DNA of 64,000 nt from Mytilus californianus (Eukaryota): assembly GCF_021869535.1 (NCBI RefSeq), contig NW_026262593.1:28148001-28212000 (forward strand). Direction: 5' to 3'. The notes below the pieces were generated by a model. The model was not told the origin of the DNA. It saw only the letters and a list, made by a program, of their open reading frames with translations, and did no database searches. Both the position numbers and the translations under genes were made by a program. Each line of letters begins with the position of its first letter. Positions within the stretch are counted from its first letter, which is position 1. Shown one piece after another: positions 9,171 through 32,779 of the stretch.

Positions 9171-11790
9171 TAATAATAAAAACAGATTATATATATCCAA
9201 CTTACATCCAGACCTATCCTTTCCCTTAACCACAACTTTAAAGATGTGTAGAAAAGAAATGATTCATTCACTGTAAATAAATCTGTAGGAACAATTGATT
9301 TTCTTATTTTTCTAATATATAAAATGAGGTTTACATCTGGATTTTTTGTTTGTAATCATGGAAATAATTATTCAGTTACAAATTATAAGGGGAGTATACA
9401 TAATGATATTTATTTATTTCCATTGTAAAATATATTCTAATTCGTGAAGTCTTTATTCCGTAATACCTGCTTCATTATATTTTTGGATACACTATAATAA
9501 CCTAAGTTTGTATGTTTCATAATGGAGATTTTCCGCTTTTCTACTCTATAGGGAAGATTTTTATAATTTTCTTTCTTTTGTAAACTTATTTTGATTGGTT
9601 AATTTGTTTTGTCTTGTTGTCTTTTTCATTTCATTTCGAATATACTATGTATCAACCTAAGCTTAAGTCAGGTTAAAAACAACTAATCTATTTTTTTTCA
9701 AACGAAAAGAAAAACAAAAACAAGCAACCGAAGGTATTCTCTCATTTTTACCAACCGTGTTTCAGTTGAACAAAATCCTTTTGTTGTGTTTCAATCAGAA
9801 AGAATTTGGTTTTTTTTAAGTCTTCATTTTTTTTTATTTCTTTCTAAACCCACATTATTTCAGGCAACATTCTTGCAAATAATTTACGTTTTGCTGAAAA
9901 TATTTACAAAAAAATGCATTTTACTTATTTTACTCAAAATAAAGGTGAAAATAACGCACAAAAAGGTTTTTTTTTCTGTAAATGCATGTATTTATTTATT
10001 TATTAATTTATTAATTAATTTATTTATTTATTTATTTATATTATTTCAATTTTTCAATTTTATTTATTTTGTTTGTTTTTATTTATTAAATTGTTCATTT
10101 TTATTACTCTATTTATCTTATTTATGTTGCTATATACTTCCGTTCTGGAAGTTATGTCATCTCTTATTGTTCATGTTAAACACAATATGAACGAAAGAGT
10201 TTATCAATTACTCGATCAATTACTAAAATCAGATACCGATGCAATTTGTTTTATCAAATGTTTAAGCAGAATAAAAAATAGCAAACACTTTTATTATTCC
10301 CAATCGAATCTCAAATATGTGTAATGAATATATTAGAACTCTCGAAGGCCGAATAAATCGCGTCTTGATTAAAATGATTTTATTGTCAATTTATGATATT
10401 TTATTACTTTATTCATTAGTAAAATGTGCCTCTCACAATTTTTGATAGATTCACAAATATTTTGTTGCTAAATATGTGCACGGTTCTTTATTTATGCCAT
10501 TCTAAATACTGCTCATACAAATATTTGTTAATGTTTTTCTTAATTTCCTTAGGGAATTTTCCAATATGCCAAACCTATGTATTTGTTTTTTTTTTAATAC
10601 ATAATGAAATATGTATAATTTCTTTACAAAGTGAGCACAGTTTAATTTTCTGTATTGAAGTAATAATCATTATTTATGTTAATATTGAAATTGGAGGCAT
10701 AATTAATTTCTTCTGATATTGAATTATCTCTTGATAAGTATGTCTTTAGAAACGATCATCTCCTCTTTTTTCAAAAGTATATATATAGCGGTATAAACTT
10801 TTGATACAAAAGTATGGCTACTAAACGGACGTGCAGTATCGGAAATAAAATAAATAATGCTTTACGCATAAAAAAAAGTATTTAAGTGTCGGAATGAAAA
10901 CATAATTGAATTTTGTTTGATTAATTTATTGTTATAATCAAAATTATTGGAATTGAGAATATGTCTTTGTTTCATTGAAATTCTTTCTCACAATGCACAC
11001 TGTAAGAGCTTGATTTCATTTATGTACTAATGTTTTTAGCAATTTTTTTTTAAACTTTGAATTTTGAAACAACTTTCAGAAATTTACCTTTATCTTTGAT
11101 GAGTTTTTTTTCTTTCAAAATATCAAATAAGAGGTTTCTATATGCTGTTTCAAAACCTTCAAAGTCCGGAAAATAAGGCGCTTACCATTCATGTTTTAGA
11201 GCATCGGTGTTACTTTTTCGGGACATACAATTTTAAGCTTCAATATAAAACAAGCTATTTTTTCAATTACATACAGGAACGAGATTAGTTTTAATCAGTG
11301 TTTTTTTTATCCAAAGAATTTAGAATCTAGAATCAAACAATTTACTTAGAAATATACTTTTATCAAAAGATGAATGTTCGGTGCGTTAGTGAGCTCTGTT
11401 AATTTTGTGTACACACTATTTACATTTAGTACTAACTTTTAACTAAAATCTCAACTTTGAATTTACTTTTACTTGATTGTTTTCTTTTTTACTTCTGTTT
11501 CAAGTCTTTGTATGTGCTTCTTTCTGATGCGTTTCCAATCCACGGCTGAAAATCGATCAGGAAAATTTGACCGAAATTTGCTGTTATGCTTAAGCCCTTT
11601 TGGTATTTAAGCTATCACACTTTTAATATTTTTGTCATGAGCGAACGTACCCTATGAAGGTTATTTCAAAAACACACATCGTGGGCACGAAAATTAAATC
11701 ATTTTTTTATTTGTATGTGTGTTTGTTTAATATGTTTTGTTCATCTAAAAATTATTTGTATTTGATTTGGTATTCTATCTGTTGATTTGA

Positions 11791-11820
11791 GCGCCACTGA
11801 TGAGTCTTATTTAGACAAAA
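11791..11820 (+). ncRNA. Degenerate hammerhead ribozyme (family A)
   Basis: CTGATGA-GTC-TTATTTA-GAC at 11797. GAAA is mutated to AAAA and stem III is deleted. Confidence 0.6.
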
Positions 11821-12262
11821 TCATAAGCCTTGTATCTTTGTTCGTTTTTAAAACGAATGGGTCGATGCTAATACTAGTGGATATTCGTACCCGAGGGAAA
11901 CACCAGCGCAGTAGACAGCAATTTTGTGTCGACATGAAATATCATTATGTGTTTATTTTCTGTAAATTTATTGTTAATGAAACGTGAAAGTTTTCGACAC
12001 ACTAAGGTGTTAATTTCTACCCAGGCTTAGATTGCCTTAGCCATATATATTTGGCACAACTTTTCGGAATGTTTGTTTTCTTTTATACTCTTCATTTTCG
12101 TTTTTGATTTGGTCTTCTATATGTTTTGAGTAGAGATCTTATGTAAATGAAACGTCTGGCTCACCAAGTTATAAGCCTCGTATCTTTGATGAGTTTTTCC
12201 ATATTTTAATCTTTATTTTGTTTGAAGCAATAACGAGAACCATTAACGATACAAATTTTTAC

Positions 12263-12308
12263 TGCACCAGATGTGCATTTCAACAATAAATGTTTCCTCA
12301 GTGATGTT
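12263..12308 (-). ncRNA. Minimal type I hammerhead ribozyme, intact core (family B)
   Basis: Minus strand reads ACATCA CTGAGGA AAC-ATTTATT-GTT GAAA T-GCAC-ATC/TGGTG. It has the CUGANGA and GAAA boxes, a 3-bp stem II, an AUC cleavage triplet and a 5-bp stem I. Confidence 0.75.
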
Positions 12309-13801
12309 CGAGGCCAAACGTAAGACGCTTACAATTCATATTTTGTTGGAGCATCGGTGTAATTTTTCCGGACAAACAATATTGAGCTTGAACAAAAAAC
12401 AAGCTATTTTTTCAATAGCATACAAGAACGAGATTATTTTTAATCAATGTTGTTTTTTTTCAATATATTTAGAATCAAACAATCTACTTCAAAACTATAC
12501 TTCTACAAAATATGAATGTTCGGTGCCTTAGTGAATTAAATCGATGGTGTGTAAACAACATTCACATTTAGTACTAAATTTTACCTAAAATTTCAACTTT
12601 GAATTACATACTTTTATTTGAATTTTCTTTTTACTTCTTTTTTCAAGTCTCTATATGTCCGTCTGTCAGATACATTTTCTCTGTGCATTACCAGGCTGAA
12701 AATTGACCTGGAAAAGTTGCCTAAGACTGGTTTCTGTTTAGACCCTTTGGTGTTTATGCTTTCAAACGTTTATATTTTTGCCAGGAGCGAGCTACACGAT
12801 GAAGGTTATTCCAAACACATACGTTGTGCACACTGTAATCAAATCATTTTTTAAATTTTAATCTGTGTTTGTTTAATATGTTTTGTTCATCTAGAAATTC
12901 AAAGACAAAAAAAATCAGATTATTAAACGCTGTCTATAATATTAACGATACCAATTTTACTGCACCAGATGCGCATTTCGACTGGAAAATTATTTTACCT
13001 CGCATTTTTACAAATAATTTTACAATAATGAAATATACTTAACTACCCTTAAATAAACAGTTTTTCATAGTCTTTAAATGTATTAAAAAGTATGAAATTG
13101 TTTCAAAATATATATTCGTCACATTTCAAACAAACACAAAGTCTCTACAGCACAAGAAAAATGATTTTATTAAAATCATTCATGTAAACTTTGGGTTGTG
13201 CACAAAAAAGGTTAAATTGTATAATTATCCTTTTCATGATAAACACATCGTGGATATGTATAGCTCTCAATAGCAAACATTCAGAAACCAAGCTGCTAGA
13301 ATACATTTTTCATATGAAAAATTAAAAGAATTACCAGTATCGCAGTACTACACTCTATAGTTATAATTGACTTTTAATTGTACTTTACAAAAACTTACAG
13401 TTTTACATCTTTATTCTTATATCTTAGACCCAATCTTTTTCTGGGACAAAGGGACTGACCAGTGACGACTATGTTTAAAAAAAACTCCGAAGAGTCAGAA
13501 ATTTTGCGTTGACATGAAATATAATTGATATGTTGATTTTCTTTAAATTTCTGTTGATGAAATGTTGAATTATTCGAAACAATAAGGTTTTTGTTTTTGC
13601 TAGCCTTACATTGCATTACTCGCATTCGGAACAACTTTCTGATGTTTTCTGTTTTTTTTATTCTTTTCAACTTCGTACTTACTTTTGTCTTCTAACTGTT
13701 GATTTGAGTGCCACTGGTGAGGCTTATTTAGACCAAGTTATATGTCTGGTATTTTTTTATGAGTTTTTACCACGACTGAGTCGATGCAACTGTTGGTGGA
13801 C

Positions 13802-13918
13802 ATTCGTCCTCGAGGGTAACATCAGCCCAATAGTCAGAACGTTCGTTTTCGAGGGCAACATCTGCCAAATAGCCAGAACGTTCGTCCCCAAGGGTAACAT
13901 CAGCCCAATAGTCAGAAC
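13802..13918 (+). repeat. 39-bp x3 tandem repeat inside a family A monomer
   Basis: GTTCGTCCCCGAGGGTAACATCAGCCCAATAGTCAGAAC-like units at 13802, 13841 and 13880. Duplicated at 16485-16602. Confidence 0.9.
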
Positions 13919-14232
13919 TTTCGTGTCCACATTAAATATCATTTTTATTTTCTGTTAATTTATTGTTAATCAAACGTGATAATATTCAAAACACTAAGGT
14001 TTTTATTCCCCGTCTTAGATTGCCTTATCCATATTCGACACAATTTGTCGGATTTTTTTTTTTTATGTTCTCTTTAACTTCATATTTGATTTAGCCTCCC
14101 ATATGTTTTTATTCCAAATGCAAGGTCTGGCTACCAAATTATACGCCTCGTATCTCTGATGGGTTTTCCACACTTTAATCTGTTATTTGTTTGAAGCAAC
14201 AACAAAAACATCATTAACGATACAAATTTTAA

Positions 14233-14278
14233 TGCACCAGATGCGCATTTCGACAATAAATGTCTCTTCAGCAATGCT
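14233..14278 (-). ncRNA. Minimal type I hammerhead ribozyme, intact core (family B)
   Basis: Minus strand reads GCATTG CTGAAGA GAC-ATTTATT-GTC GAAA T-GCGC-ATC/TGGTGC. Stem III plus its loop (ATGCGCAT) is a perfect palindrome; stem I pairs with G-U wobbles. Confidence 0.78.
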
Positions 14279-17200
14279 TGAGGCCAAAATATTTAAAAAT
14301 CAAATACTAATTTTAATTGTTTTTAAATAATTTAATTATGTTCCTGTACACATAGTGTTCTTATTCACTTTTGAAACCATCAAAATAAAACATTTGCAAA
14401 ATATTTGAAAATCCAAAACTTATTCAAACAATGAAGAACTTGTTATCCAAAAAGAACAAAAAGTCTAACTAAAGCTAGGCAAGAAATTCGAGCTTTACGT
14501 GAGAAAGATATTTTCATTAATTTCAAAAATTTTGTAACAGCAAATTTTGAAACAATTTCTGTATTTGCATGCCAGTACCGACGTACTGGCTACTGGGCTT
14601 GTAATAACATCGGTGACTAATACCACCAGCAGGGCTATCGACCCAATGAATGAAAAACATCAACGGTACCAATTTTCTGCACGAGATGCGCATTTCGACA
14701 ATAAATGTCTTTTCAGTAATTCACCAGGCTAAAATATTTGAAAAAACAAATATTATTTTTGTACTTGTTCTTAAATAAAGACATTATTTTCAAGCACATG
14801 CACATATGGTTCTTATTTAGTTTTGAAATCATAAAAATAAAATATTTACAAAAGATGTACGGTCGATGCCGAATTGATCTTAACCAATGTTGTCTAAAAC
14901 TATTTACATTTTATTCTAAATTTTGACTCAAATATCAACTTAGATACTGGGGGAACCATGCTTTTACTTGTTTTTTTTTCAATTTTTATAGGTCTGTCTA
15001 TCTGAACATTTTCCATGTGAATTTCCGGTTCACAAAATAATGTAATTGTGCTTAAATAAAGGCTTGAACGCAAATCATGGAAAGTTTATCACAGAAAGTT
15101 TTCAAACGGTTCTCTTCCTGCTTATTTGGTATTGTGTATGCTCTCAAACGTGTAATAGTTTTGGCTGTTAAAAGTATTACGACTTATCAGAAAGCAAATC
15201 ATATCGTTTTTATGTTCATTTTATGTATGTCTGTTTACTATGTTTGTTGAATAATAATAGAATTCACTTTCAAATTTGATAATTGTCTTAACACAATCTG
15301 CAACAGGAAACTGTACCAGGAAAATGCATTTTAGCTTTATTTAATAGAATTGTAATTTTTCAATAATACCTCAATTGCCATATAATGAACTGTGTATCTA
15401 TGTCTTTTAATCTATAGAAAATATGTTCTCAAGCCTAGCAAAATACATATACGTTCTCTATGAAGCCAACGCAAAGCCGTTCCAATAACCCCCAAAAAAA
15501 ATTAATAATATCATACATGTTTACATTGTTCTTGCAAATACTGCTTCAAGAGTTTTGTGTCTAGAAATTCAAAGACAAAAAAATCAGATTATTAAACGCT
15601 GTCTATAATATTAACGATACCAATTTCACTGCACCAGATGCGCATTTCGACTGGAAAATTATTTTACCTCGCATTTTTACAAATAATTTTACAATAATGA
15701 AATATACTTAACTACCCCTTAAATAAACAGTTTTTCATAGTCTTTAAATGTATTAAAAAGTATGAAATTGTTTCAAAATATATATTCGTCACATTTCAAA
15801 CAAACACAAAGTCTCTACAGCACAAGAAAAATGATTTTATTAAAATCATTCATGTAAACTTTGGGTTGTGCACAAAAAAGGTTAAATTGTATAATTATCC
15901 TTTTCATGATAAACACATCGTGGATATGTATAGCTCTCAATATCAAACATTCAGAAACCAAGCTGCTAGAATACATTTTTCATATATAAAAAAATTAAAA
16001 GAATTACCAGTATCGCAGTACTACACTCTATAGTTATAATTGACTTTTAATTGTACTTTACAAAAACTTACAGTTTTACATCTTTATTCTTATATCTTAG
16101 ACCCAATCTTTTTCTGGGACAAAGGGACTGACCAGTGACGACTATGTTTAAAAAAAACTCCGAAGGGTCAAAATTTTGCGTTGACATGAAATATAATTGA
16201 TATATTGATTTTCTGTAAATTTCTGTTGATGAAATGTTGAATTATTCGAAACAATAAGGTTTTTGTTTTTGCTAGGCTTACATTGCATTACTCGCATTCG
16301 GAACAACTTTCTGATGTTTTCTGTTGTTTTTTTTTTTTTTATTATTCTTTTCAACTTCGTTCTTACTTTTGTCTTCTAAATGTTGATTTGAGTGCCACTG
16401 GTGAGGCTTATTTAGACCAAGTTATATGTCTGGTATTTTTTATGAGTTTTTACCACGACTGAGTCGATGCAACTGTTGGTGGACATTCGTTCTCGAGGGT
16501 AACATCAGCCCTAATAGTCAGAACGTTCGTCCCCGAGGGTAACATCTGCCAAATAGCCAGAACGTTCGTCCCCGAGGATAACATCAGCCCAATAGTCAGA
16601 ACTTTCGTATCCACATTAAGTATCAGGTTTATTTTCTGTAAATTTATTGTTAATCAAATGTGGAAGTATTCGAAACACTAAGGTTTTTATTCCCCGGCTT
16701 GGATTGCCTTATCCATATTGGACACAATTTGTCGGATTTTCTGGGTTATTTTTGTTCTCTTCAACTTCATATTTGATTTAGCTTTCCATATGTTTTTATT
16801 CCAAATGCAAGGTCTGGCTACCAAATTATAAGCCTCGTATCTCTGATGGGTTTTCCACACTTTAATCTGTTATTTGTTTGAAGCAACAACAAAAACATCA
16901 TTAACGATACAAATTTTAATGCACCAGATGCGCATTTCGACAATAAATGTCTCTTAGCAACGCTTGTGGCCAAAATATTTAAAAATCAAATACTTATTTT
17001 AATTGTTTTTAAATAATTTAATTATGTTCCTGTACACATAGTGTTCTTAATCACTTTTGAAACCATAAAAATAAAACATTTGCAAAATATTTGAAAATCC
17101 AAAACTTATTCAAACAATGAAGAGCTTATAATCCAAAAAGAACAAAAAGTCTAACTAAAGCTAGGAAAGAAATTCGAGCTTTACGTGAGGGAGATATTTT

Positions 17201-18115
17201 CGTTAATTTCAAACATTTTGTAACAGCAAATTTTGAAACAATTTCTGTATTTGCATCCAGTACCGACGTACTTGCTACTGGGCTGGTAATTACTTCGGTG
17301 ACTAATACCACCAGCAGGGCTATCGACCCAATGAATGAAAAACATTAACGTTACCAATTTTCTGCACGAGATGCGCATTTCGACAATAAATGTCTTTTCA
17401 CTACAATAAATGTCTTTTCACTAATGCACCAGGCCAAAATATTTGAAAAAAACAAATATTAATTTTGTACTTGTTCTTAAATAAAGACATTATTTTCAAG
17501 CACATGCACATATGGTTCTTATTTAGTTTTGAAATCATAAAAATAAAATATTTACAAAAGATGTACGGTCGATGCCGAATTGATCTTAACCAATGTTGCT
17601 CTCAAACGTGTAATAGTTTTGGCTGTTAAAAGTATTGCGACTTATCAGAAAACAAATTATATCGTTTTTTTTTTTCATTTTATGTATGTCTGTTTACTAT
17701 GTTTGTTGAATAATAATAGAATTCACTTTCAAATTTGATAATTGTCTTAACACAATCTGCAACAGGAAACTGTACCAGGAAAATGCATTTTAGCTTTATT
17801 TAATAAAATTGTAATTTTTCAATAATACCTCAATTGCCATATAATGAACTGTGTATCAATGTCTTTTAATCTATAAAAAATATGTTCTCAAGCCTAGCAA
17901 TATACATATACGTTCTCTATGAAGAAAACACAAAGCCGTTCCAATAACCCCCAAAAAAATTTTGATAATATCATACATGTTTACATTGTTCTTGCAAATA
18001 CTGCTTCAAGAGTTTTGCGTCAAAAAGAAATAAAATATGCAAATTGAATTTAAGATAAAACGTATGAACTTATTTCCAAGTACTAAAAGCGTGCTTTTAG
18101 TTTATTTAACATCAT

Positions 18116-19748: not shown

Positions 19749-20428
19749 GCTCGCTTCATTACAAGACTTTGGCAAGCATAAATACAAACCTTTTTTGCAG
19801 AGCATTAAAACAAGAGAGCATTACAAAATAGAGAACGTAGAGTCTAAACCTCATAAAGTCAACTGTGCCTTGGTAGTAGCAACCTTTTTTTCTGTAAAAA
19901 TGGAATTGCAATATGCTAAGTTAAACGCCATGTTGTAGAAAAAACTATGTTAAATATGATTTTTCATTTTAAGAAACCATTTTTTCATAGGAAGTTAAAA
20001 TATTGATGGTAATATGCTTGAAAATATCCCACAAATGTAAATGTCCGTGTCCACAACAAATATCAACAAATATTCTAAAAAAAACCTTTATCAGGTATTT
20101 GGTGCTGAAGTATTTGGCAAAGTGAACCAAACACATCGATACGATGTTTTAAAGAAAACATGAAAAGGAGCCAATGAACCATCAAGGAAAGGAACATTTG
20201 CAATTTGGAAAAAAATATCGTCCTATTTATTATTAATTTGTATGTATATGAGGCTTTTTTCGGACGAAGTTGTCTAAAATATTACCAGTGATAAACAATC
20301 GTCTATAAAAAAAAACATTGTATTAAGCTTTGTATATCGACTCAGAATAAAAAAAGCACATACTTTCATTTTTCCCATTCGAATTCTTAATATGAGTAAT
20401 GAATATATTAGAACTCTCGTCAGCCGAA

Positions 20429-21856
20429 TTAAGGTAGATAGGGGGGCTTAATTTAACTCCATAGAATTTTTTAATAATTTGTCAAAATGTAGTTTATATC
20501 ATGTTTTTTTCAAAAATATATTAAAAAGTATGGGTCACCGACCTTTTTTTCACGCTACAGGTTGTGTTGTGAAAATTTGTCAGATTTTGTATAGATTATG
20601 CATGGAAAACCCTATTTTGTGTGAGAAAAAAAACTACACCATAGAATTTTAAGATAAAATATGAGAAGATAGCTCTAATAATATGCTTTCAGATAAGATA
20701 AAGAAAAAATGGGGTCACCGGACTCGTTTTCTTGCTACATAATAAAATAGGTAAATTCACAACACATTATATTATAAAAATTACTTTATCTGAGTTATCT
20801 CCCCTTATGTTGCAAATTTGAAAAAAATGAAACAAACAAAAATAATCTGGGTTTTTTTGTAAAATACAGCCGTGAATATGATACAACACATAATTTTCCA
20901 TATTAACATGAAAAGTCTTACAAAGTCTTATAAACCAAATCTTGAATTATATTCTAATTCTATCCTATTTTGGGGAAATTTCAGAAATTCAAATGTGACG
21001 TCACCTTTTGTTTGCGTTGATCTCTTCGGTTAACTCGGCTGTGAATTTTTATGTGCTGGTTTATGTTGTTTTATGTATCCGTTTTTATTCTGTAGTTAGT
21101 CACCACCTCGGTGTTATCATTTTTATAAATTTACTGTTTGCAAAAGTATGAATTATTCTAAATACTAAGGATTTTCTTATCCCAGACATATAACCTTAGC
21201 CGTATTTGGCACAACTTTTTGGAACTTTCGGTCCTCAATGCTCTTCAACTTTGTACTTGTTTTGGCTTTCGTACTTTATTTATCTGAGCGTCACTTGTTA
21301 GTCTTGTGTGGACGAAACGCGTGTCTTGCGTATTAAATTTTAAACCTGGTACCTTTTGTTAGCTATTATCCGTATGTTTCTCTGTCCTATATGTTCTCCC
21401 ATTTATTTGGATTGTAGTCCTGTCATGTAATGTTGTCATTTTTATGTTATATCTAACATTGCCATAAAAGCGGGAGGTTTGGCTAGCCACAAAACCAGGT
21501 TCAACCCACCATTTTTTTTTCTTTAAATGTCCTGTACCAAGTCAGGAAAATGGCCATTGTTATATTATAGTTCGTTTCTGTGTGTGTTACATTTTAATGT
21601 TGTGTTTCTGTTGTGTCGAAGTTCTCCTCTTATATTTGATGTGTTTCCCTCAGTTTTAGTTTGCAACCCAGATTTGTTTTTTTCTCAATCGATTTATGAA
21701 TTTCGAACAGCGGTATACTACTGTTGCCTTTATTTACACATTAATAACATACTACTCCCGAAATTTGCACATTTGCACATTTCATTAAAGATCTAGACCG
21801 ATTTTTATCTGCTATTTCAAAATCCAAGATGGAATAAGACACCCAAGCTACCTTAA
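20429..21856. mobile_element. Kolobok-like element with TTAA TSD and a nested retrozyme/PLE-derived insert
   Basis: TTAA-GGTAGATAGGG at 20429; right end (reverse complement) TTAA-GGTAGCTTGGG. The paralogous empty site at about 10345-10370 (GCCGAATAAATCGCGTCTTGATT) joins the two flanks. About 20995-21735 is a family A monomer with a mutated hammerhead (21285-21332) plus a common terminal repeat. Confidence 0.8.
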
Positions 21857-23457
21857 TCGCATCTTGATTAAAATGATTGTATTGTCAATTTATGTTATTT
21901 TGGGTTTTTTTATATATTTTTTTGTTGTTACTTTATTCATTAGTAAATTTTGCCTCTCACAGTTTATGATAATTTTTATATTTCCTTTTATTGTTATTAT
22001 CAATAGTTATTATTTTTTACACGGTTTTGATATCAATAATGTAGGTTTTTCTTTTTTTTCTTTTTCTATTGAAACTACATATACCAACAACCTGGAACTA
22101 GCTATCTATTGGTCACAGCCAAGAAAAATATAACTTTTTGCTAAATTTGTGCACGGTTCCTTATTTATGCCATTCTAAATACTGCTTATACAAATATTTG
22201 TTAATGATTTTCTTAATTTCCTTAGGTAATTTTTCAACATGCAAAGCCTATTCATTTGTTTATTTATAATACATAATGAAATAAGTATAATAACTAACTT
22301 TACAAAACTGAGCACAGTTTGATTGTCTGTATTGAATTAATAGTCATCATTTATGTTAATATTGGAATTGGATGCATAATTAATATCTTCTGCTACTGAA
22401 TTAATTGTTGATTGGTATGTCTTAAGAAACGATCATCTCCTCTTTTTTCAAAAGTATATATGTAGCGGTATAAACTTTTGAAACAAAAGTATGGCTACAA
22501 AACGGACTTACACTATCGGAAATAAAATAAATAATGCTTTACGCATATAAAAAGTATTTAAGTGTCGGAATGAAACCATAATCGAATTCTATTTGATTTA
22601 TTAATTGTTAATCAAAATTGATGGAAATGAGAATATTCCTTGCATCATTAACTTTTTTTATCTCATAATGCACACTACAAGAGCTTGATTTTCATTTATG
22701 TACTAATAGTTCTATCGATTTTTTTAAAACTTTATATTTGAAACAACTTTCAGTAATGTACCTTTATCTTTCAAGATTTTTTTTTTTTTTTTACTTCTAT
22801 GAAAATGTTTGAAAACAGGGTACCTGAAAGAGAATTTCAAGGATTCGCTTAAAAAGGTGTCCAAAACTTGGAATTTCAAAATATTTAATAAGCGGTTTCT
22901 GTATGCTGTTTCAAAACCTTCGAAGTTCGGAAAATAAGGCGCTTACCATTCATTTTTTTTTGGAGCATCGGTGTTATTTTTTCGGGACAAACAATTTTGA
23001 GCTTGAACTAAAAACAAGTCATTTTTTCAATAACATACAGGAACAAGATAAGTTTCAATCAATGTTTTTTTCCAAAAATTTATAATCTAGAAGCAAACAA
23101 TTTACTAAGAAATATACTTTTACAAATGTGAATGATGATGATGTGTTCGTTTTCTGTAAATTTATTGATAATGAAATGTGACGATTTCGACACACTAAGG
23201 TGTTAACTTCTACCCCAGCTTAGATTGCCTTAGTTATATATATTTGGCGCAACTTTTTGGAATTTTTGATTTTTTATACACTTCATCTTTGTATTTGATT
23301 TGGCCTTCCATATATTTTATGTCGAGATCTTATGTAAATGAAACGTCTGGCTCACCAAATTATAAGCCTCGTATCTTTGATGAGTTTTTCAACATTTTAA
23401 TCTGTAATTTGTTTAAAGCTACAACAAAAAAAAAACATTTATGATACAAATTTTACT

Positions 23458-23502
23458 GCATCATATGTGCATTTCGACAATAAATGTCTCTTCAGTGATG
23501 CT
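23458..23502 (-). ncRNA. Minimal type I hammerhead ribozyme, intact core (family B)
   Basis: Minus strand reads GCATCA CTGAAGA GAC-ATTTATT-GTC GAAA T-GCAC-ATA/TGATGC. Perfect 6-bp stem I and an AUA (NUH) cleavage triplet. Confidence 0.8.
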
Positions 23503-25707
23503 CGAGGCCAAAATATCTGAAAATCTAATAAATATTCAAAAATAGGGCGCCTACCATTCATATTTTTTTGGAGCATCGGTGTTATTTTTTCGGGACAAAC
23601 AATTTTGAGCTTGAATAAAAAACAAGCTTTTATTTTAATAGCATACAAGAACGAAATTATTTTCAATCAACGTTTTTTTTTTCTCAAAAATTTGAAATCA
23701 AACAATTTACTACAAAACTATACTTTCTACAAAAGATTAATGTTTGGTGCCTTAGTGAACTAAATTAATGTTATGTTAACAATATTAAAATTTAGTACTA
23801 AACTGTAACTCAAGTTTCAACTTTGAATACTATAGTTTTACAAATTTTCTTTTTACTTTTGTTTAAATTATTTATATGTCCGTCTTTGAAAAACATTCCC
23901 AGTTTCAGGCTAAAAGTCGACCCGGAAAAGTTGACTTTATACATGTTTTGCTGTTCTGTATGGGTCGTTTTGGTGTTTTTGCTATCAAACGTTGTCACGA
24001 TCGAGCATACTCTTTGAAGGTTTATCCAGAAACACACATTGTGCGCGCGGAAATCATATCATATCTATTTATTCTTATTTATGTTTGTTCAATATGTGTT
24101 GTTCATCTAGAATTTAAAGACAAAAAAAATTGGAATATTGAACATTGTCAATAGAATTAACGGTACCAATTTGACTGCACCAGACGCGCATTTCGACAAT
24201 TAATGTCGCTTCAGTGGTGCTCAATAAAATAATTCAATAAAACAAAATTTAGAATGTGCTAACAAAAAAGCAAAGAAACTAAGCATATAATATAATTCAA
24301 GAAGAAGTCGTATGATTGACAATGAGACCAACTAACGTAGATGTAGATGTACTATGACAGTTTTGTGTAAGACAATTTTACACAACCTCTGATCTTACGT
24401 TTATTTAACTTGCGATCATGAGTTTTAAATTTTTTGAAATACATTTGGAGGGCAGGATTTAGCAATACGATAAATGTTTTTTCCCGAACAAAATACTTCA
24501 ATTTCTAAAAAATATCTTAATTAATCATTTTATAAGTAATAGAATCTGCACAATTTGTTGTATAAAATTTTACCAGGTAATTCCTTACAACCGTTTTTAA
24601 TATGATTTTACAGTAATGAGATAAGTTAAGAGGCTTATACAAGACTATCCCCCTAGATATAAACAGTGTTTCGATATTGTTTGATTTATTAAAAGGTGTA
24701 GAACTGTTTAGAAATATATATACGTCTTCTTTACAGTCGGGATTTTTTTGTTTGATGATATCATTCATGTAAACTTTTTGTCGTGCACAACAATTGTTCA
24801 AATGCACAATTATACTTTTCATGGTAAACACATAGCGAGAACTTCTCTATGTTCATTACTGTAGGAATATTTATCTAAAACTCATATTTCACTATTCAGC
24901 CCCATTCTAGCTCTTTGGTCGGGTTGTTGTCTCTTTGACACATTCCCCATTTCCATTCTCAATTTTACATTGTGGATAACTGCAGTTCTCAATAGACAAG
25001 ATTCATCTAAGCTACTAGACAAGTATTTGTATGAAAAGTAACAAAATATATAACATAATTACACCCTATAGTAATATTAGAATTTTATAAATGATTCACA
25101 AAAAACTAATAGGTTTACATCTTTATTCATATTGCTTACACCATATTGTTTGCTTGGGCATATGAACCCGTTAGGTTTTACTATGTATCTTACAGTTGCA
25201 ATCTCACTAGTATTACATGAATGACCATGAATGGAAGAGATTGTAATCTAAATTTACATCTGCAATGAAGCAAATTTTCATATTTATTTTTTTTTTATAA
25301 AATTTATGAATATATTTTTCCACACAAAAAAAAATATTTTATTCAACTTCATCAAAATGAATTAAAGGAGATGTGGCGTCTATGAGACAGCAATGAGAAA
25401 GGCACGCTTTAGACCAAAAATTTGGAAAGCAAAACTACGAAACTTCTGTGGTCTTAAAATCCAATACAGAATCATTCGTAAAAACCTACTTTTCACAAAA
25501 GATAAGTGATAGATTCCTTCTTAAAGTCAATCAATGTCTATAGAAATGTTTTAAAACTTTGTTGTAAAAAGAAATCATTGAAATTATTTAGAATTAACAA
25601 ATATATCTCGTCTCTCATGAAAAGCTCTAATTCCTTGTCCTGTTTTGGCAATACTTTTGTCTTTTTTGTAAATAATAAGTTTTTAATTTTCAAGTAGTTT
25701 GGCCTCG

Positions 25708-25752
25708 AGCTTCACTGAGGAGACATTAACTGTCGAAATGCGTATCTGGTGT
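25708..25752 (+). ncRNA. Minimal type I hammerhead ribozyme, intact core (family B, inverted copy)
   Basis: GCTTCA CTGAGGA GAC-ATTAACT-GTC GAAA T-GCGT-ATC/TGGTGT. The core is intact; stem I has one mismatch. Confidence 0.7.
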
Positions 25753-26592
25753 AGTAAAATTGGTGCAATCAATTTAGTACTTTTTTTTTACTCGAATTGT
25801 CATTTTCAAATTACATAAAGGGTTTGGCTGTTCTGTTTAGACCCTTTTGATAGATATTTGATCGCATGTTTTACATGTTGTGTATTGTGTATTGTTGTTT
25901 GTTTTTTTTGTCTTTTTCAATTTTTTTTTCCATGGGTTTGTCAGTTTATTTTCGACTATGGGGTTCAATGTTCCTCTTTGCCTCTCTTTGGCCGTTCCAA
26001 TGTTTTGTCATGAGCGTACCTTATGAAGATCATTCCAGAAACAAATGTTTTGCGAACGGAAATCAAATCATTTTTGTATGTACATTTGTATGTTTGTTTA
26101 ATATGCTTTGTCATATAGAAATTCAAAGACAAACAAATTACGAATATTGACTGTTCTCATATAAAGAATTATTAATATTGTTGTTTTCTTTTATTAGTTT
26201 CCTTTCTTTCATTTCAAATATGAATCGATGACATCAAAATACCCATAAAATTCTACATCAATTTTTTATGTCCATGTTCTTGTATTTACCTAACGAGTCA
26301 AAGTATCTACCACGTCCATTCTAATAACAAAAGAGTTTCTGAACCTGCTTCTATACGAAAGCTTGGTGTTTTTATTTATTTGCTCATCCACAAACAATCT
26401 AACTGACATTGTCGATACTGTGGACCAATATCGCTGTTGTTTCTACTTAAGACGTCTATATCTGTCATGATAAAAAAAAATATTAAACAAATATGTACCA
26501 TCAAATTTACATGCTAAAAAGAGAATAAAATACAAAATTTCGAGTATGACAAAAAAACAACAGAGAAACTAAACGTATGCCAGGTTTTTGGA

Positions 26593-27098
26593 AAATTTCA
26601 CATAATTGTATATAACTTGAGATCATGAATATTAATATTCTATTAATACAATGGGAAATCATATTTTATCAATACAAAAGATATTTATCCCCCATAGAAC
26701 TCCAAATTTAATAGATATAATTATTTTTAATTAATCTTTTTTATGAATACTCGCACAATCTACAATATAAATTCTAAGGAAAATGCCTTTTTCAAAATCG
26801 TATATTGGGACACATACCTTACTCCCCATAATATGAATATTGTTAAATTTCACATAATTGTAGATAACTTGAGATCATGAATATTAATATTCTTTTAATA
26901 CAATGGGAAATCAGATTTTATCAATACGAAAGATATTTATCCCCCACAGAACTCCAAATTTAATAGATATAATTATTATTAATCAATCTTTTTTTAAGAC
27001 TACTCGCACAATCTACAATATACATTATAAGGAGAATGCCTTTTTTCAAAATCGTATATTGGGACACATACCTTACTCCCCATAACATGAATATTGTT
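26593..27098. repeat. 252-bp tandem duplication
   Basis: AAATTTCACATAATTGTA.ATAACTTGAGATCATGAATATT starts at 26593 and 26845. Both units end in TACTCCCCATAA.ATGAATATTGTT. Confidence 0.9.
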
Positions 27099-27764
27099 TC
27101 TGTGTCTTTTAGGCTATTAAAAACTCTTAAATTGTTTATAGATATATATATATATATATATAACGAGCACAAAGCCATCACAGTCCGGGAAAATAACTTT
27201 AATAATATAATTCATATAAACTTTTGGTAGTGCACAAAAAAGGCTCAAATGCATAATTATCCTTGTTTATGGTAAATACATCGTAGTTGTAGCTCTCAAT
27301 AGCAAACATTCATCCAAGCTGCTAGAATACATTTTTCATGGGAAAAATTAAAAGAATTATCGCATAACTACATTCTATACTCATATTCGAATTTTAATTT
27401 TACAATGTACTTTACAGAAACTAATAGATTTACATCTGTATTCTTATATCTTATATCCAATCTTTTTCTGGGACATAGGGACCGACCACTGGCGATTATG
27501 TGGTTTGATATTGTAATATCACTAGTTGAAAATGAATGGAATAGATTGATTTTAAAAACACCCGAGTGGTTAGCACGTTTGTGTTGACATGAAATGCCAT
27601 CGATATGTTGATTTTCTGTTGCTGGAATGTTGAATTATTCGAAACAATAAGGTTTTTTCAACCCAAGGCTTAGATTGCATTACTCGTATTCGGCACCACT
27701 ATCCGATGTTTTCGATGTTTAACTCTCAACATCGTATTTAATTTGGTATTCTAACTGCTAATTT

Positions 27765-27812
27765 GAGCGACACTGATGAGTCTTATTGAGACAAAACTAT
27801 ACGACTGGTATC
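27765..27812 (+). ncRNA. Near-intact but mutated hammerhead (family A)
   Basis: CTGATGA-GTC-TTATTGA-GAC at 27773, then AAAA instead of GAAA and GAC instead of the GTC triplet. Confidence 0.55.
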
Positions 27813-29449
27813 GTTGATGAGTTTTTACAACTACTGGGTCGATGCGACTGCTGGGTGACGTTCGTCCCCGAGAGGATGCCACTGCTGGGTGACGTTCGTC
27901 CCCGAGGGTAACAACAACCCAGTAGTTAGCATAATTGTGTCGACATGACATATCATTGGAACGTCTGGCGTACCGAATTGTAAGCCTCGTATCTCTGATG
28001 CGTTTTTCCACATTTTAATCTGTAATGTATTTTAAAGAGCTTATGAACCTTAAAAAAAACCAAAAGTCTACCCAAAGCAGGGTTCGGATTAAGAGCTTTG
28101 CATGAAGGATGTACTAGTATATTCATTATTTTAAAATAATTTTCAAATTTTGTAACAGCATTTTAATAACACAATGTCCGTATTTTTTCATGCCAGTACA
28201 GTGGTACTAGCTACTGGACTGTGATACCCTCGGGGAATATCAGTCCACCAGCAGCGGTACCGACCCAGTGAAGGAAAAAAACATAAACGGTACCAATTTG
28301 ACTGCACCAGATTCGGATTTCGTCTTAAATGTCTTCAGCGATCCTCGAGGCCAAAATACCGGAAAATTCATTACTAGTATTAATTTATATTTGTTTTTAA
28401 ATAATAAAATTATTTTCAAGTACATAGTGTTTCTAACTAGTTTTGAAGGCATCAAAATAAAACATCTACAAAAGATGTATGGTCGGTGCTTTAGTGAACT
28501 ATATCTTTTTTTTTTAAATAAATAGAATACAATCTGCAATATACCGTATTTCTAAAAGCTTATTTTTTTCAATTATCAAGCGCTTCGGAAACACGGAATT
28601 TATGAAGTGTGATTTTCATTTGAGGACATTAAAAACGCACAATTTAAGGGAATGCTCACAGTTACCATTTGATAAATATTTCCTTTTTTACACTATTGCA
28701 ATGTTAACGTTCAAATACATTTTGTTCATATATCTCTTATAAAATCTTAACATTTTATATATATATGACAAACATTATATTTGTATATATCTTAAATAAT
28801 TGATGTGCATAACCATAAATTTCAGGCAGTGTAAAAGTATTTTCTTTTTTGGACAAATGACGTACTCCCTACCCTGGGGTCCTTCCTCTTTTCGATTATG
28901 ACGTTACATGTAGTAACATGTAATTCGTGGTCGAAAAACATATTACTACTTGAAAGTTAAAGTACAATAGAAATATTGTTTGATAAATTTTCGACATCCC
29001 TTATACAAAGCCACAAGAAAACGTCCTTTTATATTTGATGTTGATTTCGATTTTTCCGAATTATATAGCCTATTCAGAAACTGTTCTTTACAAATAGAAT
29101 TTAATTAATTATTTATTAATTAATTCCTTGTTTTTTTTAACCAAACAAACAAATATATATATTTCATCTTTTCATGTTCTGTGACATTGTTTACACTGGC
29201 AAAAAATCGCCATGCTAATTCATAAACAATAGACGAAATATTGTTTGTTCTTCTTGGAGTTTTCTTTCATATAAATATGTATTATTATACTAAAAAAAAA
29301 TTAATAAAAAAACAACAAATGAAGAAAAATAACAGCAATGAAATGATTACAAAAATATTGTGCCAGGAACGAGAGATATATATCCATATTTGTGAAAAAT
29401 GTAGTAAGTAAAAGTATTAATAAATTTATGATATCTATATCCCTGCGGT

Positions 29450-29885
29450 AAAAGTCTGCTTTGTATCGATCTGATGAGTTAAGCCCTTCAACTGATTATT
29501 ATAGTTTGTTCTTATGATGTGCTGTAACACCACTGTCCTAGGTTAGGGGAAGGTTGAGCGCTCACAAATATGTTTAACCCCGCCACATTATCTATGTGCC
29601 TGTCCCAAGTCCGGAGCCTGTAGGTCAGTGATTGTTGTTGGTTAATGTCTGTCATATCTGTTTGTCGTAAATTGTTTTGCCATAAATTAGGCCGTTAGTT
29701 TTCTCAATTAAATTGTTTCATATTTTTCTTGTCGGGGCCTTTTATAGCCGACTATACGGTATGTGTTTTTCTCATTGTTTAAGGCCGTTCGGTTGCCTTA
29801 TAATTATTGCTAACATCCACTTCATTTGAACTTTGGTGGATAGTTGTCTCATTGGCAATCATACCACATCTCCTTATTTTATATG
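29450..29885 (+). repeat. PLE-associated terminal repeat family (CTGATGAGTTAAGCC...GTCAGGAGCC...CATACCACATCTCCTT)
   Basis: The same modules follow the PLE RT relic at 39230-39890. Inverted fragments at about 200-290, 655-780, 35100-35460, 51495-51780 and 56300-56500. Confidence 0.7.
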
Positions 29886-31226
29886 TACGTGTCAATGACA
29901 AACATTAAACTAACACAAAAAGATGACTCTTTCAGAAAACACGAAAAAGGGATCCGGAGTTGGTATTATTAATATAAATGGTCTCATGCCTTCAATTGTT
30001 GGCCAATGCCGGTCTAAATCATTGTGATTTGCCTAGAACCTCGTTCTGGAGGTGCCGATTTCAGTGTTCTTTAAAATAAATATTCGATTCATTTTATTGA
30101 ATGAAAAAAACTAGTTTCTTCCCAATCGCTTTTCTAGATTTACCTTGTTCATGAAAGCTCAATGCCAGACATTTTAAAGACTAAAGACGTATGCGTAGTT
30201 GAAAAGGTGAAGTGCTGTATAGCCAAAAAAGACTTAAACAGAATAGCAAGGTCCATCTGATGTCAACTTTGACTGACGGAGTAGGAACTTTAATTTCTTA
30301 CCAATTTCTTAATTCATGAACGGGAAAAGGTATGTTTAGTTCATGTCAGTCCCAAAACACTGACCAATAACATAAACCAAATTGGAAGTATTCTGAAAGC
30401 ATAAAGTCAGAACAAAAGAAGAGTGTGAACAAAACACTTCAAACTTAACAAAACCAAGAAAGTGTAAAACAAGACCATTCAGTACATAAGTTTATATAAA
30501 TGTATCTGAAGAAAAAGCAAAGTAAAATATGAAAATAACACTTTCGGAATTACATGTGTCCGAAGCGCTTCTCTGGATTAAATTTACCAGGAACGCTCAA
30601 AATCGAATATTTGAAAGCCAATGATGTATAAGGACCGAAATACTTGAAGAGCTAAATGACCAAAAAAGGACCTAAAATATAGCCAGATCCATCTAAGCTC
30701 AACTTTGCCTGAGGAGTTGAAACCAACTACGGAAAGTTTAATGTTCTGCATTTTAGAATTTTTTGTATGGAATGTACATGACATATTCTATTTCAAACGT
30801 AATTTATCTGCACTGGTTCGGTACCGATCCTGTCGGACTGTATATCCCCGAGCATTCAACCAACCCAGTAACCAATGCTTTGGTACTGACATGATTAAAA
30901 TGATAGAATTCTTGAAATAAATTCCTTGTATATATTATGAAATAGTATTAAGACTAACGTGACAACTCCATCCAGCAAACGTGGCCTTACAGATGGCTTT
31001 GTTCTATTTTTGTTATTTTGTTTTGATGGTCATTGGTAATATTCTTTTCATTGATATGGTTATAATTACAAATTAACTTAACAAACATATTTTTGAAATA
31101 CTTAGCATTTTCTATCCAATGCAAAGATAACTTTAGCTGTATTTGGCAAAAACTTTCGGAGTTTTGGGGATCTCAATGCTCTCCAACTTTCTACTTTATT
31201 TGGTCTTTTTAACTTTTTCTGATTCG

Positions 31227-31272
31227 TGCGTCACTGATGAGTCTGTTGTAGACGAAATACGCGTCTGGTGTG
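31227..31272 (+). ncRNA. Minimal type I hammerhead ribozyme, intact core (family A)
   Basis: TGCGTCA CTGATGA GTC-TGTTGTA-GAC GAAA T-ACGC-GTC/TGGTGTG. Canonical CUGAUGA and GAAA, a GUC triplet ending at 31265, and a wobble-rich stem I. Preceded by a full family A monomer body (about 30830-31226). Confidence 0.78.
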
Positions 31273-32095
31273 TACATTGTTTAGCCTTGCATCTATAATG
31301 AGTTTATTTCGTTGATGGTGATATTCGGTTTGCTCCTTCTTATGGAGTGTATTTTATTTTATTTTAGTGTGTTCAATATACGCATGTTTTCAGTTAGCTT
31401 TCAGATTTCAATAAAGGTAATATTTTCTTTACAATGCTTTCACATTTTGTGTTTTTATAATAACAACCCTGCACATCCGAGGTATGCACTTTAGGGATCT
31501 ATCGTACTGAAGATTTACCAGGCGTTGGTTCATTATTGTTTGTAATTTCTTTACAATGCATAGTTTTTACCTCAGGGATATAGATATCATAAATTAATTG
31601 ATACTTTCACTACATTAATCACAAATATGGATATTTATTCTGAGAGTATAATTCTACATGCAGGAATTAAATTAAAATTAGTATTTAACACCAGCTTTTT
31701 ATGGTAATATTATTTATAAAGTTAACAAGTTTATATATATAGAATTGTCAATTTTTAGGCTTGGTAATTATAAATGTTATTATTATCGCTGTTGTTGGTG
31801 TTTAATCATTGCAAATGATAGAACAGAAACTTATAAAATACGTAAAAACAATATTTAATCAAGTTTCAAACAGGAAATAAGTTAATCGGTATTATTTTTA
31901 AAAAATCAAAATTTTTATTGTATATTTATCAATAAGTCTATCAATCAAAACAGAAAGTTTGGAAGTCTTTATAAATACTATTATTGTTATAAACGAAAAA
32001 GCTGAAATAACATACCTTTTTTGTATTATAGTCTTTGATATAGAACCATACATTATATGGACAAACTTTTGTATTATTGTCTTTCAAATAGAACC

Positions 32096-32455: not shown

Positions 32456-32779
32456 TATGTTTACAAAATATCCCTTACTTCGTGATAACAATTAATAAAA
32501 AAAAAATTAACGAATTCATATAAGCTATATCCTAGTTGTTTAAGCTATTTCTTGATAAAATAATACCAAAGAAAAACAAAGGATATGGGGTATCCATCCA
32601 TGACACAAAATCTGTATATGCACAGCAAAAAAAAACCACACAAAAAGCAAAGGAACAGCGCCAATGTTCAGCTTTCAAGGTGCAAGATTTTTTATCACCT
32701 TGAAGAAACACTCCGACAGAGACAGGACTATCTCAGAGAGGATAAAAACATGCGGGTAAAGTATTTCTTTGTCTCCGAT

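What the first reader, a model, noticed from the sequence alone, without database searches (positions are those of the whole stretch)
11630..31275. 20-kb array packed with about 20 minimal hammerhead ribozymes from three families, on both strands
Seen in the sequence: family A (CTGATGA-GTC-loop-GAC-GAAAC..GTC) at about 11797, 12140, 13714, 14125, 16398, 21290, 23340, 27773 and 31234. Family B (CTGA[A/G]GA-GAC-loop-GTC-GAAAT-GCGC-ATC) at about 12263, 12960, 14233, 14680, 15630, 16921, 17365, 23458, 24177, 25708 and 28300. Family C (GCGTACC.[G/T]ATGAAGG.TATTCCAGAAAC, all degenerate here) at about 11640, 12790, 24005, 26015 and 30560. Five copies keep the full CUGANGA/GAAA/NUH core. Established: minimal type I hammerheads with a 2-bp stem III and palindromic loop occur in Penelope-like elements and in non-LTR retrozymes of invertebrates, including mussels. 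Inference: this is not an ordinary single-family head-to-tail retrozyme run. It is a mixed three-family, bidirectional ribozyme field amplified at the DNA level, which no ORF-based annotation would show.
Basis: partly seen in the sequence, partly recalled or inferred. Interest (0 to 1): 0.85.

Follow-up and report, generated by a model that had tools for sequence, protein, structure and literature searches.

The report
Decayed mussel hammerhead retrozyme cluster
This 20-kb stretch of a mussel genome holds about 25 mostly dead relics of small self-cutting "hammerhead" jumping elements (retrozymes), multiplied mainly because the DNA block carrying them was copied locally about seven times; it is real but ordinary for this genome.

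Summary
A covariance model built from genome-wide copies finds 12 hammerhead (HHR) matches at E<1e-3, and 17 at E<1. All lie in 11644-31272 and none in the other 44 kb.

Family A is the published Mytilus galloprovincialis retrozyme. Family B is a sister retrozyme with its own 350-bp tandem arrays elsewhere. Family C is a dispersed HHR-like motif whose ribozyme status I could not confirm.

The "field" is not about 20 insertions. One composite block, [580-bp C-unit][optional spacer][A array, +][B array, -], occurs about seven times locally at 68-96% identity. Its non-repeat parts exist nowhere else in the 1.65-Gb genome. That points to about three founder insertions, then DNA-level unequal crossing-over, then three later solo insertions.

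No two intact same-strand ribozymes sit one unit apart. There is no ORF and no RT. The one RNA-seq run laid on the locus gave zero locus-specific reads.

Verdict: a fossil retrozyme cluster inside a local higher-order repeat. The scan has noted hammerhead retrozymes 143 times in this genome, including another window with about 20 relics.

The parts
11170..11754 (+). C-unit, local copy 1 (about 580 bp). It carries the family C HHR-like motif at its 3' end (11644-11687).
   Evidence: 78% identical to 12321-12899 and 74% to 23539-24116. The full unit is found only in this window. R1 scores 11.9 bits, E 0.51.
11790..11836 (+). Family A hammerhead, dead (G12>A). It is part of a decayed A unit at 11755-12230 whose next HHR, at about 12140, keeps only its 3' half.
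   Evidence: R1 24.5 bits. Unit match 70-75%. Alignment A3.
12263..12308 (-). Family B hammerhead with an intact core. Stem II shows a G-C to A-U compensatory change. Cleavage is predicted 3' of 12270.
   Evidence: R1 58.1 bits, E 1e-14. Regex hit. The element is only HHR plus a tail of about 42 nt.
12321..12899 (+). C-unit, local copy 2. A degenerate family C motif lies at about 12775-12820.
12968..12993 (-). Family B hammerhead, 5'-truncated (3' half only). Its duplicate is at 15637-15662.
   Evidence: R1 partial match to model positions 14-39. Alignment A1.
12994..13492 (.). Spacer: non-repeat sequence that belongs to the long form of the composite block.
   Evidence: The genome search finds it only at four places inside this window.
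13493..14203 (+). Decayed family A array of about 2 partial units. It holds a dead HHR at 13707-13753 and a remnant at about 14125.
   Evidence: Unit matches of 67-78%. R1 8.4 bits. Alignment A3.
14204..14757 (-). Family B 1.3-mer (period about 449 bp). HHR 14233-14278 has an intact core, with cleavage 3' of 14240. HHR 14678-14723 is dead (G8>A).
   Evidence: R1 62.2 and 45.4 bits. Unit match 78-88%. The only exact genome-pattern B match in the window.
12880..18021 (.). Youngest tandem duplication of the composite block: 12880-15551 against 15552-18021. It duplicates the A sites (16391, about 16810) and the B sites (15637, 16920, 17363), all dead.
   Evidence: 94.6-96% identity over 2.06 + 0.42 kb. 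Core defects are shown. The junction does not fall on any HHR cleavage site.
21117..21367 (+). Solo 5'-truncated family A insertion. HHR 21287-21332 is dead (core reads CUUGUUA).
   Evidence: 77-81% to the A units, positions about 150-365 plus 3-41. R1 32 bits.
22874..23538 (.). Composite block copy: C-unit 5' part, A 3' part, then B. B HHR 23457-23502(-) has an intact core with H17 = A. Cleavage is predicted 3' of 23464.
   Evidence: 79-87% to 11113-12318 at an offset of about 11.2-11.7 kb. R1 63.9 bits.
23539..25160 (.). Composite block copy: C-unit (motif at about 24005), B HHR 24176-24221(-) dead (A9>C), then spacer remnants at 24659-25160.
   Evidence: R1 55 bits with the core change shown.
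25546..25790 (+). Solo 5'-truncated family B insertion in the opposite orientation. HHR 25708-25753 has an intact core, with cleavage 3' of 25746.
   Evidence: 74.5% to B unit positions 136-350. R1 52.4 bits. Inverted-repeat pairs I1-I5.
26003..28520 (.). Oldest composite block copy. It holds the C-unit 3' end (C motif 26013-26056), a 252-bp local tandem, the spacer, a dead A (27766-27829, G12>A), a remnant at 27960, the B body, and a dead B (28303-28345, -).
   Evidence: 68-84% to 12776-14869. R1 14.9, 17.6 and 24.5 bits.
30520..30580 (-). Degenerate family C-like motif on the minus strand. Small B-unit fragments lie at 30638-30894.
   Evidence: Read by eye against locus L056. Unit fragments. 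R1 only 9.5 bits.
31045..31307 (+). Solo 5'-truncated family A insertion. HHR 31227-31272 has an intact core but a weakened stem III. Cleavage is predicted 3' of 31265.
   Evidence: 79% to A unit positions 140-365. R1 50.3 bits. Rfam Hammerhead_1 23.1 bits, below the cut-off.

Best explanation
The region is a fossil cluster of non-autonomous hammerhead-bearing retroelements (animal non-LTR retrozymes) in non-coding DNA of a Mytilus-type mussel.

Inferred history:
1. One family A element (+ strand), one family B element (- strand) and one family C-motif element became neighbours in a stretch of unique DNA.
2. This composite block of 1.15-2.7 kb was then amplified about seven-fold in place by unequal crossing-over or tandem segmental duplication. 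That is a DNA-level process. The youngest round is about 95% identical and the older ones 68-87%.
3. Three later solo insertions were added: A at 21117, B(+) at 25546 and A at 31045.

How the parent families work is established for family A in the literature, not shown here. Tandem units are transcribed, the hammerhead cuts the RNA into unit-length pieces, a tRNA-type ligase circularises them, and a reverse transcriptase supplied in trans copies them back into DNA. That enzyme is probably from a Penelope-like element.

At this locus the machinery is spent. About 20 of about 25 motifs carry inactivating core changes or truncations. The five with an intact core are isolated. The locus appears transcriptionally silent. 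Its most likely present function is none.
For: - HHR identity and clustering: custom model hits occur only in 11644-31272.
- The fold is supported at family level. 90% of cells are paired, with 10 of 14 pairs changed on both sides. In copies chosen by homology only, 95% (A) and 91% (B) are paired, and four pairs are fully compensated between A and B.
- Family A equals the published mussel retrozyme. The A unit from L004/L002 shares long identical stretches with the clone and consensus printed in the supplement of PMC7229834, and the 46-nt HHR of L028 is identical.
- Families are abundant and tandem elsewhere: 350-365-bp arrays, with 4,061 and 707 exact cores against 0 in controls.
- Block duplication: order, orientation and flanks are collinear among the copies. 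The spacer and the C-unit are absent from the rest of the genome. The youngest junction is not at a cleavage site.
- Decay: core defects are listed.
- No coding capacity and no RT.
- Silence: raw RNA-seq reads give depth 0 on all unique parts of 22900-28800. Every read that was laid fits only partly, so those reads come from repeats elsewhere.
Against: - A tree of the 120-nt B module is a star. It does not group the window copies, apart from the 95% duplicate pair. Common descent of the B copies therefore rests on flank collinearity, not on shared mutations.
- The RNA test used one cDNA library, of which about 6% was read, and such libraries lose small circular RNAs.
- Five cores are intact, which is more than nothing. 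The 3' half of the B motif is better kept (85-95%) than the flanks (about 77%). That could reflect subfamily conservation, gene conversion or some constraint.
Confidence: 0.8

Rival explanations
1. The locus is an active ribozyme or circRNA source. Its transcripts would be cut by the five intact hammerheads, possibly acting as dimers, and would feed retrozyme circles or other processed RNAs.
For: Five cores are intact by sequence, with paired stems I and II. The palindromic stem III would allow dimer action. Family A RNA is abundant in mussel tissues (PMC7229834).
Against: There are no locus-specific RNA reads. No two intact same-strand HHRs lie one unit (350-450 nt) apart; the neighbours 14678, 24176 and 12968 are dead or truncated. 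The copies are 12-33% diverged from the unit consensus. MFE folding gives the hammerhead junction for only one of the five.
Confidence: 0.07
2. The composite (C-unit, spacer, A, B) is itself a compound mobile element that amplifies as a block through an RNA intermediate, for example by rolling-circle reverse transcription of a large circle.
For: The block recurs about seven times with conserved order. An earlier first-stage note proposed this reading.
Against: The spacer and the full C-unit occur only in this window of a 1.65-Gb genome. The copies are adjacent and in register, as unequal crossing-over would produce. The youngest duplication junction (12880/15552) is not at a ribozyme cleavage site. 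The A and B ribozymes lie on opposite strands, so a single RNA cannot use both.
Confidence: 0.04
3. The repeated A/B/C arrangement reflects independent, site- and orientation-specific insertions into each paralogous block. Penelope-type integration is known to make tandem and inverted structures. On this view the elements did not hitch-hike on DNA duplication.
For: The B-module tree is a star. In 7 of 8 other loci that hold two families, the families lie in opposite orientation. Insertions here and elsewhere share a fixed 3' end about 45-50 nt past the cleavage site and a variable 5' truncation.
Against: Terminal branch lengths of the window B copies (0.08-0.18) match about half the pairwise flank divergence. 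That fits one insertion just before amplification. Identical truncation points and junctions recur in paralogous blocks. Intact A and B copies are not within 5 kb of each other over the first 55 Mb of contig C1.
Confidence: 0.05
4. The convergent A(+)/B(-) relics act as a dual-strand small-RNA (piRNA-type) cluster that silences active retrozymes.
For: Only circumstantial: a dense, mixed, bidirectional set of dead transposon fragments in non-coding DNA.
Against: No long-RNA signal on either strand. No small-RNA data could be examined.
Confidence: 0.04

Closest known systems
Mytilus galloprovincialis non-LTR retrozyme (Mg353; Cervera & de la Pena 2020, NAR, PMC7229834)
   Same: Family A units in this genome are 355-365 bp. 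They carry the same hammerhead; the 46-nt motif of L028 is identical to the cloned one. They also carry the same downstream conserved module, have low GC, encode no ORF and form tandem arrays. Family B shares the conserved downstream module and the unit size (350 bp).
   Different: The window copies are 5'-truncated or partial units, 67-88% identical to consensus and mostly with dead cores. They are not a clean tandem array. Family B differs from the two published consensus ribozymes at U7>A, a flipped stem II and stem III C-G>U-A. The paper's legend says its two consensus forms differ only in loops 1 and 2 and upper helix I, so B seems not to be one of them. I could not see the figure.
Minimal hammerheads of Penelope-like elements and Terminons, which cleave as dimers (Lunse, Weinberg & Breaker 2017; Arkhipova et al. 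2017; cited from my own knowledge and via PMC8557442)
   Same: Short stem III formed by an 8-nt palindrome (ACGCGCGU, AUGCGCAU; one subfamily has AUCCGGAU), a stem I of about 6 bp, and no loop-loop tertiary contacts. Tandem and inverted insertion structures and a short tail beyond the ribozyme are also shared.
   Different: No RT or GIY-YIG ORF and no pseudo-LTR occur anywhere in the 64-kb window. The elements are non-autonomous.
Hammerhead-bearing repeats of newts (satellite 2) and schistosomes (Sm-alpha SINE), from my own knowledge
   Same: Type I hammerheads embedded in high-copy non-coding repeats of animals.
   Different: No sequence relation was tested or expected. Those are single-family arrays or SINEs, not a locally duplicated composite.
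Higher-order repeats and tandem segmental duplications made by unequal crossing-over
   Same: In-register local copies of a 1.15-2.7-kb composite unit. Identity is graded from 68% to 96%, and the unit is confined to one locus.
   Different: There are only about seven copies, with large indels between them. This is not a homogenised satellite.

Membership tests
Hammerhead ribozyme, type I (Rfam RF00163) | Catalytic core C3-U4-G5-A6-N7-G8-A9 ... G12-A13-A14 ... A15.1/U16.1-H17 | tested here: met
   Met by 5 sites: 12263-, 14233-, 23457-, 25708+ and 31227+. The other 20 or so sites do not meet it, through point changes, deletions or truncation.
Hammerhead ribozyme, type I (Rfam RF00163) | Three helices around the core, open at helix I, kept by compensatory change | tested here: met
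   At family level 90% of cells are paired, 10 of 14 pairs change on both sides, and slid controls give 16-51% paired. Copies chosen by homology only are 95% (A) and 91% (B) paired, with four pairs compensated between A and B. The rows were pre-selected for pairing, so one search is the fairer test.
Hammerhead ribozyme, type I (Rfam RF00163) | Score at or above Rfam's gathering cut-off (34 bits) | tested here: not met
   There is no window hit at gathering score and the best is 23.1 bits. Genome copies of family A do pass, at up to 44.8 bits. Family B and C copies are not reported by Rfam.
Hammerhead ribozyme, type I (Rfam RF00163) | Self-cleavage 3' of H17 | not testable with these tools
   This needs transcription assays. 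RNA-seq showed no molecule ends at the predicted sites, but there was no coverage either.
Metazoan non-LTR retrozyme | Sequence homology to a characterised retrozyme | tested here: met
   Family A units match the published mussel clone and consensus. The window copies match those units at 67-81% for A and 74-94% for B.
Metazoan non-LTR retrozyme | Head-to-tail units of 170-400 bp, each with one hammerhead | tested here: inconclusive
   Other loci show clean arrays of 350-365 bp. The window has only vestiges: a B 1.3-mer at 14204-14757 and decayed A partial multimers at 13493-14203.
Metazoan non-LTR retrozyme | No coding capacity, low GC | tested here: met
   GC is 27-33%. No ORF of 120 aa or more lies in the region, and there are no Pfam hits.
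Metazoan non-LTR retrozyme | Expressed as linear and circular unit-length RNA | tested here: inconclusive
   No locus-specific reads in one RNA-seq run, of which 6% was read. The library type is poorly suited to small circles.
Penelope-like element (pLTR hammerhead) | Adjacent ORF with RT and GIY-YIG endonuclease | tested here: not met
   Only six ORFs of 120 aa or more occur in 64 kb, and none has a Pfam domain.
Family C as a hammerhead | CUGANGA core plus paired helices I-III | tested here: inconclusive
   The 21-mer occurs 1,506 times against 2 in the control. Only 10 of 20 independent copies have CU before GAUGA. The helix I/III fit is no better than with permuted partners (65 of 1000 permutations as good). 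Stem II would be 2 bp closed by A.A. Rfam gives no hit. All window copies are degenerate.

The most novel reading that the evidence does not exclude
Two things that the evidence does not exclude:
1. Family C is a genuine, undescribed hammerhead variant with about 1,500 copies. Its stem II would be 2 bp closed by an A.A pair, and its helix III an 8-nt palindrome.
2. Hammerhead-bearing elements of different families preferentially integrate next to each other in opposite orientation (7 of 8 other loci, plus this one). That would be a signature of Penelope-type target-primed integration, and this locus then froze and amplified it.
Probability: 0.15. Interest if true: 0.5.

Novelty: new member of a known kind. 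Interest (0 to 1): 0.22.

Why it matters
Mainly as annotation. It shows that an apparently striking 'ribozyme field' in a mussel genome comes from a few old retrozyme insertions that were copied along with a local DNA duplication. Counts of hammerhead motifs per window therefore should not be read as counts of insertion events or of active ribozymes.

It also gives a natural series of paralogous ribozymes with single core changes (G5 deletion, G8>A, A9>C, G12>A) beside intact ones. These could serve as ready-made controls in cleavage assays.

Two side points deserve a genome-wide look. Family B is a sister retrozyme family of 350-bp units that I did not find described. Neighbouring families also show a possible orientation bias.

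Tried and rejected
- Rfam at gathering score gave nothing in the window.
- MFE and cofold folding of the five intact copies gave the hammerhead junction as the minimum for 23457 only. This is not informative either way.
- A tree of B modules was meant to test local common descent. It came out unresolved as a star, with only the 95% duplicates grouping.
The bias therefore rests on 8 loci.
- The listed exact A and B sites on contig C1 show no A-B pair within 5 kb. Strong co-clustering of intact copies is therefore rejected.
- Family C as a proven hammerhead is rejected for now.
- No Penelope RT or other coding context was found.
- The RNA peak at 24910-24967 is a 58-nt piece of an unrelated very high-copy repeat. 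Reads run on into unlike sequence on both sides, so it is not locus expression.
- I did not align the published clone computationally, because that would have meant typing a long sequence. The comparison is by reading the strings printed.

Full report
**Observation**

The window is G000:C13:28148001-28212000 of a 1.65-Gb, 175-contig assembly. GC is about 31%.

Rfam at curated thresholds reports nothing. With permissive thresholds only 31228-31271(+) appears, as Hammerhead_1 at 23.1 bits against a cut-off of 34. A plain core-plus-stem-II search finds five sites: 25715+, 31234+, 23495-, 14271- and 12301-. The family B pattern has 3 exact hits where shuffles give none. Aligning the eleven family B coordinates shows a real, roughly 100-nt conserved module.

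I then built a covariance model, R1, from 41 copies taken from other loci of the same genome. I ran it over the whole 64 kb with filters off. It gave 12 hits at E<1e-3 and 17 at E<1. All lie between 11644 and 31272, and nothing comparable lies in the other 44 kb.

The five highest-quality sites with intact cores place H17 at 12270, 14240 and 23464 on the minus strand, and at 25746 and 31265 on the plus strand. The remaining sites are homologous but broken:
- 24176: A9>C
- 16920: G5 deleted
- 14678: G8>A
- 17363: C3>G and G8>A, plus a 20-nt internal duplication
- 21287: core reads CUUGUUA
- 11790 and 27766: G12>A
- 28303: stem II deletion
- 13707 and 16391: several changes
- 12968 and 15637: 5'-truncated
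- 12140, 14125, 16810, 23340 and 27960: only the 3' half survives

**What the families are**

Both modules are genome-wide repeats. The first look gave more than 1,000 candidates for B and more than 2,300 for A. Exact core patterns occur 4,061 times (A) and 707 times (B), against 0 for the reversed controls.

At other loci they form clean head-to-tail arrays. L015 is a 350-bp unit in 6.9 copies (family B). L002, L009 and L004 are 354-365-bp units (family A).

The family A unit shares long identical stretches with the genomic clone and the circRNA consensus of the Mytilus galloprovincialis retrozyme printed in the supplement of Cervera & de la Pena 2020 (PMC7229834). The 46-nt ribozyme of L028 is identical to the cloned one. 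That paper reports about 5,000 type I hammerheads in 350-390-bp repeats, self-cleavage at about 0.1 per minute, and abundant circular RNA in gonad and mantle.

Family B shares the conserved module downstream of the ribozyme, so it is a sister retrozyme family. It differs from A by U7>A, a flipped stem II, and C-G>U-A in stem III.

The hammerhead fold is supported at family level. 90% of cells are paired and 10 of 14 pairs change on both sides, well above the slid controls. Those rows had been pre-selected for pairing. In copies selected only by BLAST homology, 95% (A) and 91% (B) of cells pair, and four pairs are fully compensated between the two families. A B subfamily with stem III AUCCGGAU in place of AUGCGCAU keeps the palindrome.

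Family C is different. Its 21-mer is frequent, at 1,506 copies with up to 2 mismatches against 2 in the control. Conservation is limited to about 70-100 nt, with unrelated flanks. Only half of the independent copies have the full CUGAUGA. The proposed helices I and III fit no better than permuted partners (65 of 1000). Stem II would be two G-C pairs closed by A.A. Rfam does not report it. I treat it as hammerhead-like and possibly hammerhead-derived, but unproven. All window copies are degenerate.

**Architecture of the locus**

Matches to the A and B unit consensus occur only within 11755-31265. A lies on the plus strand. B lies on the minus strand except for one copy. Identity is 67-94%.

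Self-comparison shows that these matches are not independent. A composite block recurs about seven times, starting near 11170, 12321, 14832, 17503, 22874, 23539 and 26003. Its layout is:
- a C-unit of about 580 bp, ending in the C motif;
- an optional truncated B plus a spacer of about 500 bp;
- an A array on the plus strand;
- a B array on the minus strand.

Order, orientation and junctions are collinear. Identity ranges from 94.6-96% (12880-15551 against 15552-18021), through 79-87% (10462-12982 against 22135-24197), to 68-73% (13035-14869 against 27068-28489).

The decisive point is that the non-repeat parts exist only here. A genome search with the spacer returns four places, all inside this window. 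The full C-unit likewise occurs only in this window.

The composite is therefore not a dispersed mobile element. It is a local higher-order repeat made by DNA-level duplication. The youngest junction is not at a ribozyme cleavage site, which argues against an RNA-circle origin for the block.

Three elements lie outside the block pattern and are later solo insertions: A at 21117-21367, B(+) at 25546-25790 and A at 31045-31307. Like copies at other loci, each is 5'-truncated and ends about 45-50 nt beyond the cleavage site. That pattern is expected for target-primed reverse transcription from a fixed 3' end.

The roughly 25 sites thus reduce to about three founder insertions plus three later ones.

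A tree of the short B module could not confirm common descent, because it is a star apart from the young duplicate pair. The terminal branch lengths (0.08-0.18) do match about half the divergence of the flanks, which fits insertion shortly before amplification.

**Activity**

No ORF of 120 aa or more lies in the region. The six such ORFs in the window, and ten shorter ones, have no Pfam domain, so no reverse transcriptase is nearby.

No two intact ribozymes on the same strand lie one unit apart, so no unit-length RNA could be released.

I laid one raw RNA-seq run of the same species label, two probable RNA contig sets and one DNA set on 22900-28800. The DNA set covers the stretch. The RNA reads give zero depth on every unique part. 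All 1,846 laid reads fit only partly and run on into unlike sequence, so they come from repeat copies elsewhere. No pile-up of molecule ends was reported.

The large RNA peak at 24910-24967 is a 58-nt piece of an unrelated very high-copy repeat.

There are caveats. Only about 6% of one library was read, and cDNA libraries under-represent small circles.

**Comparison and verdict**

This works like, and for families A and B is, the animal non-LTR retrozyme system described in mussels. The ribozymes have the minimal, palindromic-helix-III shape also typical of Penelope-like elements, but no such element is present here.

What is particular to this locus is only that relics of several families were caught in a local duplication. 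The scan's own notebook lists 143 notes on hammerhead retrozymes in this genome, including another window with about twenty relics of several families. I used those notes as leads only.

In the loci I hold, two different families within 3 kb lie in opposite orientation in 7 of 8 cases. I could not extend this test. Intact A and B copies are not close neighbours on contig C1. I record the pattern as unexplained.

Overall this is a real feature, correctly seen, of a known kind and probably functionless. Interest is low.

Noticed in passing
L001, L043, L053, L054, L055, L059, L063 (other loci of G000) and window 11.7-28.5 kb: Where two different hammerhead families lie within about 3 kb, they are in opposite orientation in 7 of 8 independent loci, and A against B in the window as well. 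The one-sided binomial gives about 0.02-0.04. This may reflect Penelope-type inverted co-insertion, or chance.
   Followed up: partly
L043:286-331, L043:824-869, L055:2758-2803: A family B subfamily has helix III AUCCGGAU instead of AUGCGCAU. That is a double compensatory change that keeps the 8-nt palindrome, as expected if the palindrome (hairpin or dimer helix) is under selection.
   Followed up: no
L069 (G000:C110:35979354-35982374) and G000:C165:37929525-37929865: The family C motif also forms short-period satellites, with units of 59 bp and 45 bp and dozens of copies. These are much shorter than any retrozyme unit.
   Followed up: no
window 24905-24967 (also 19094-19155, 97% identical): This is a 58-63-nt fragment of an extremely abundant repeat. 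Summed contig depth is about 527,000 in a DNA run, against 5-15 for the unique flanks. RNA-seq read depth is about 200-280 on each strand. Reads continue into varied sequence on both sides.
   Followed up: no
window 32778-33078: A 60-bp tandem repeat in 5 copies at 93% identity lies inside a 174-aa ORF (32585-33109, +). It has no significant Pfam match. This could be a repeat-protein exon or a minisatellite.
   Followed up: no
window 26593-27098: A local 252-bp tandem duplication at 94% identity lies inside the oldest composite block copy.
   Followed up: no
window 13803-13924 and 16486-16608: A 39-bp tandem triplication lies within the conserved downstream module of the family A unit (the part containing CCCCGAGGGTAACATCAGCCCA). 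It is a local expansion inside a retrozyme relic.
   Followed up: no
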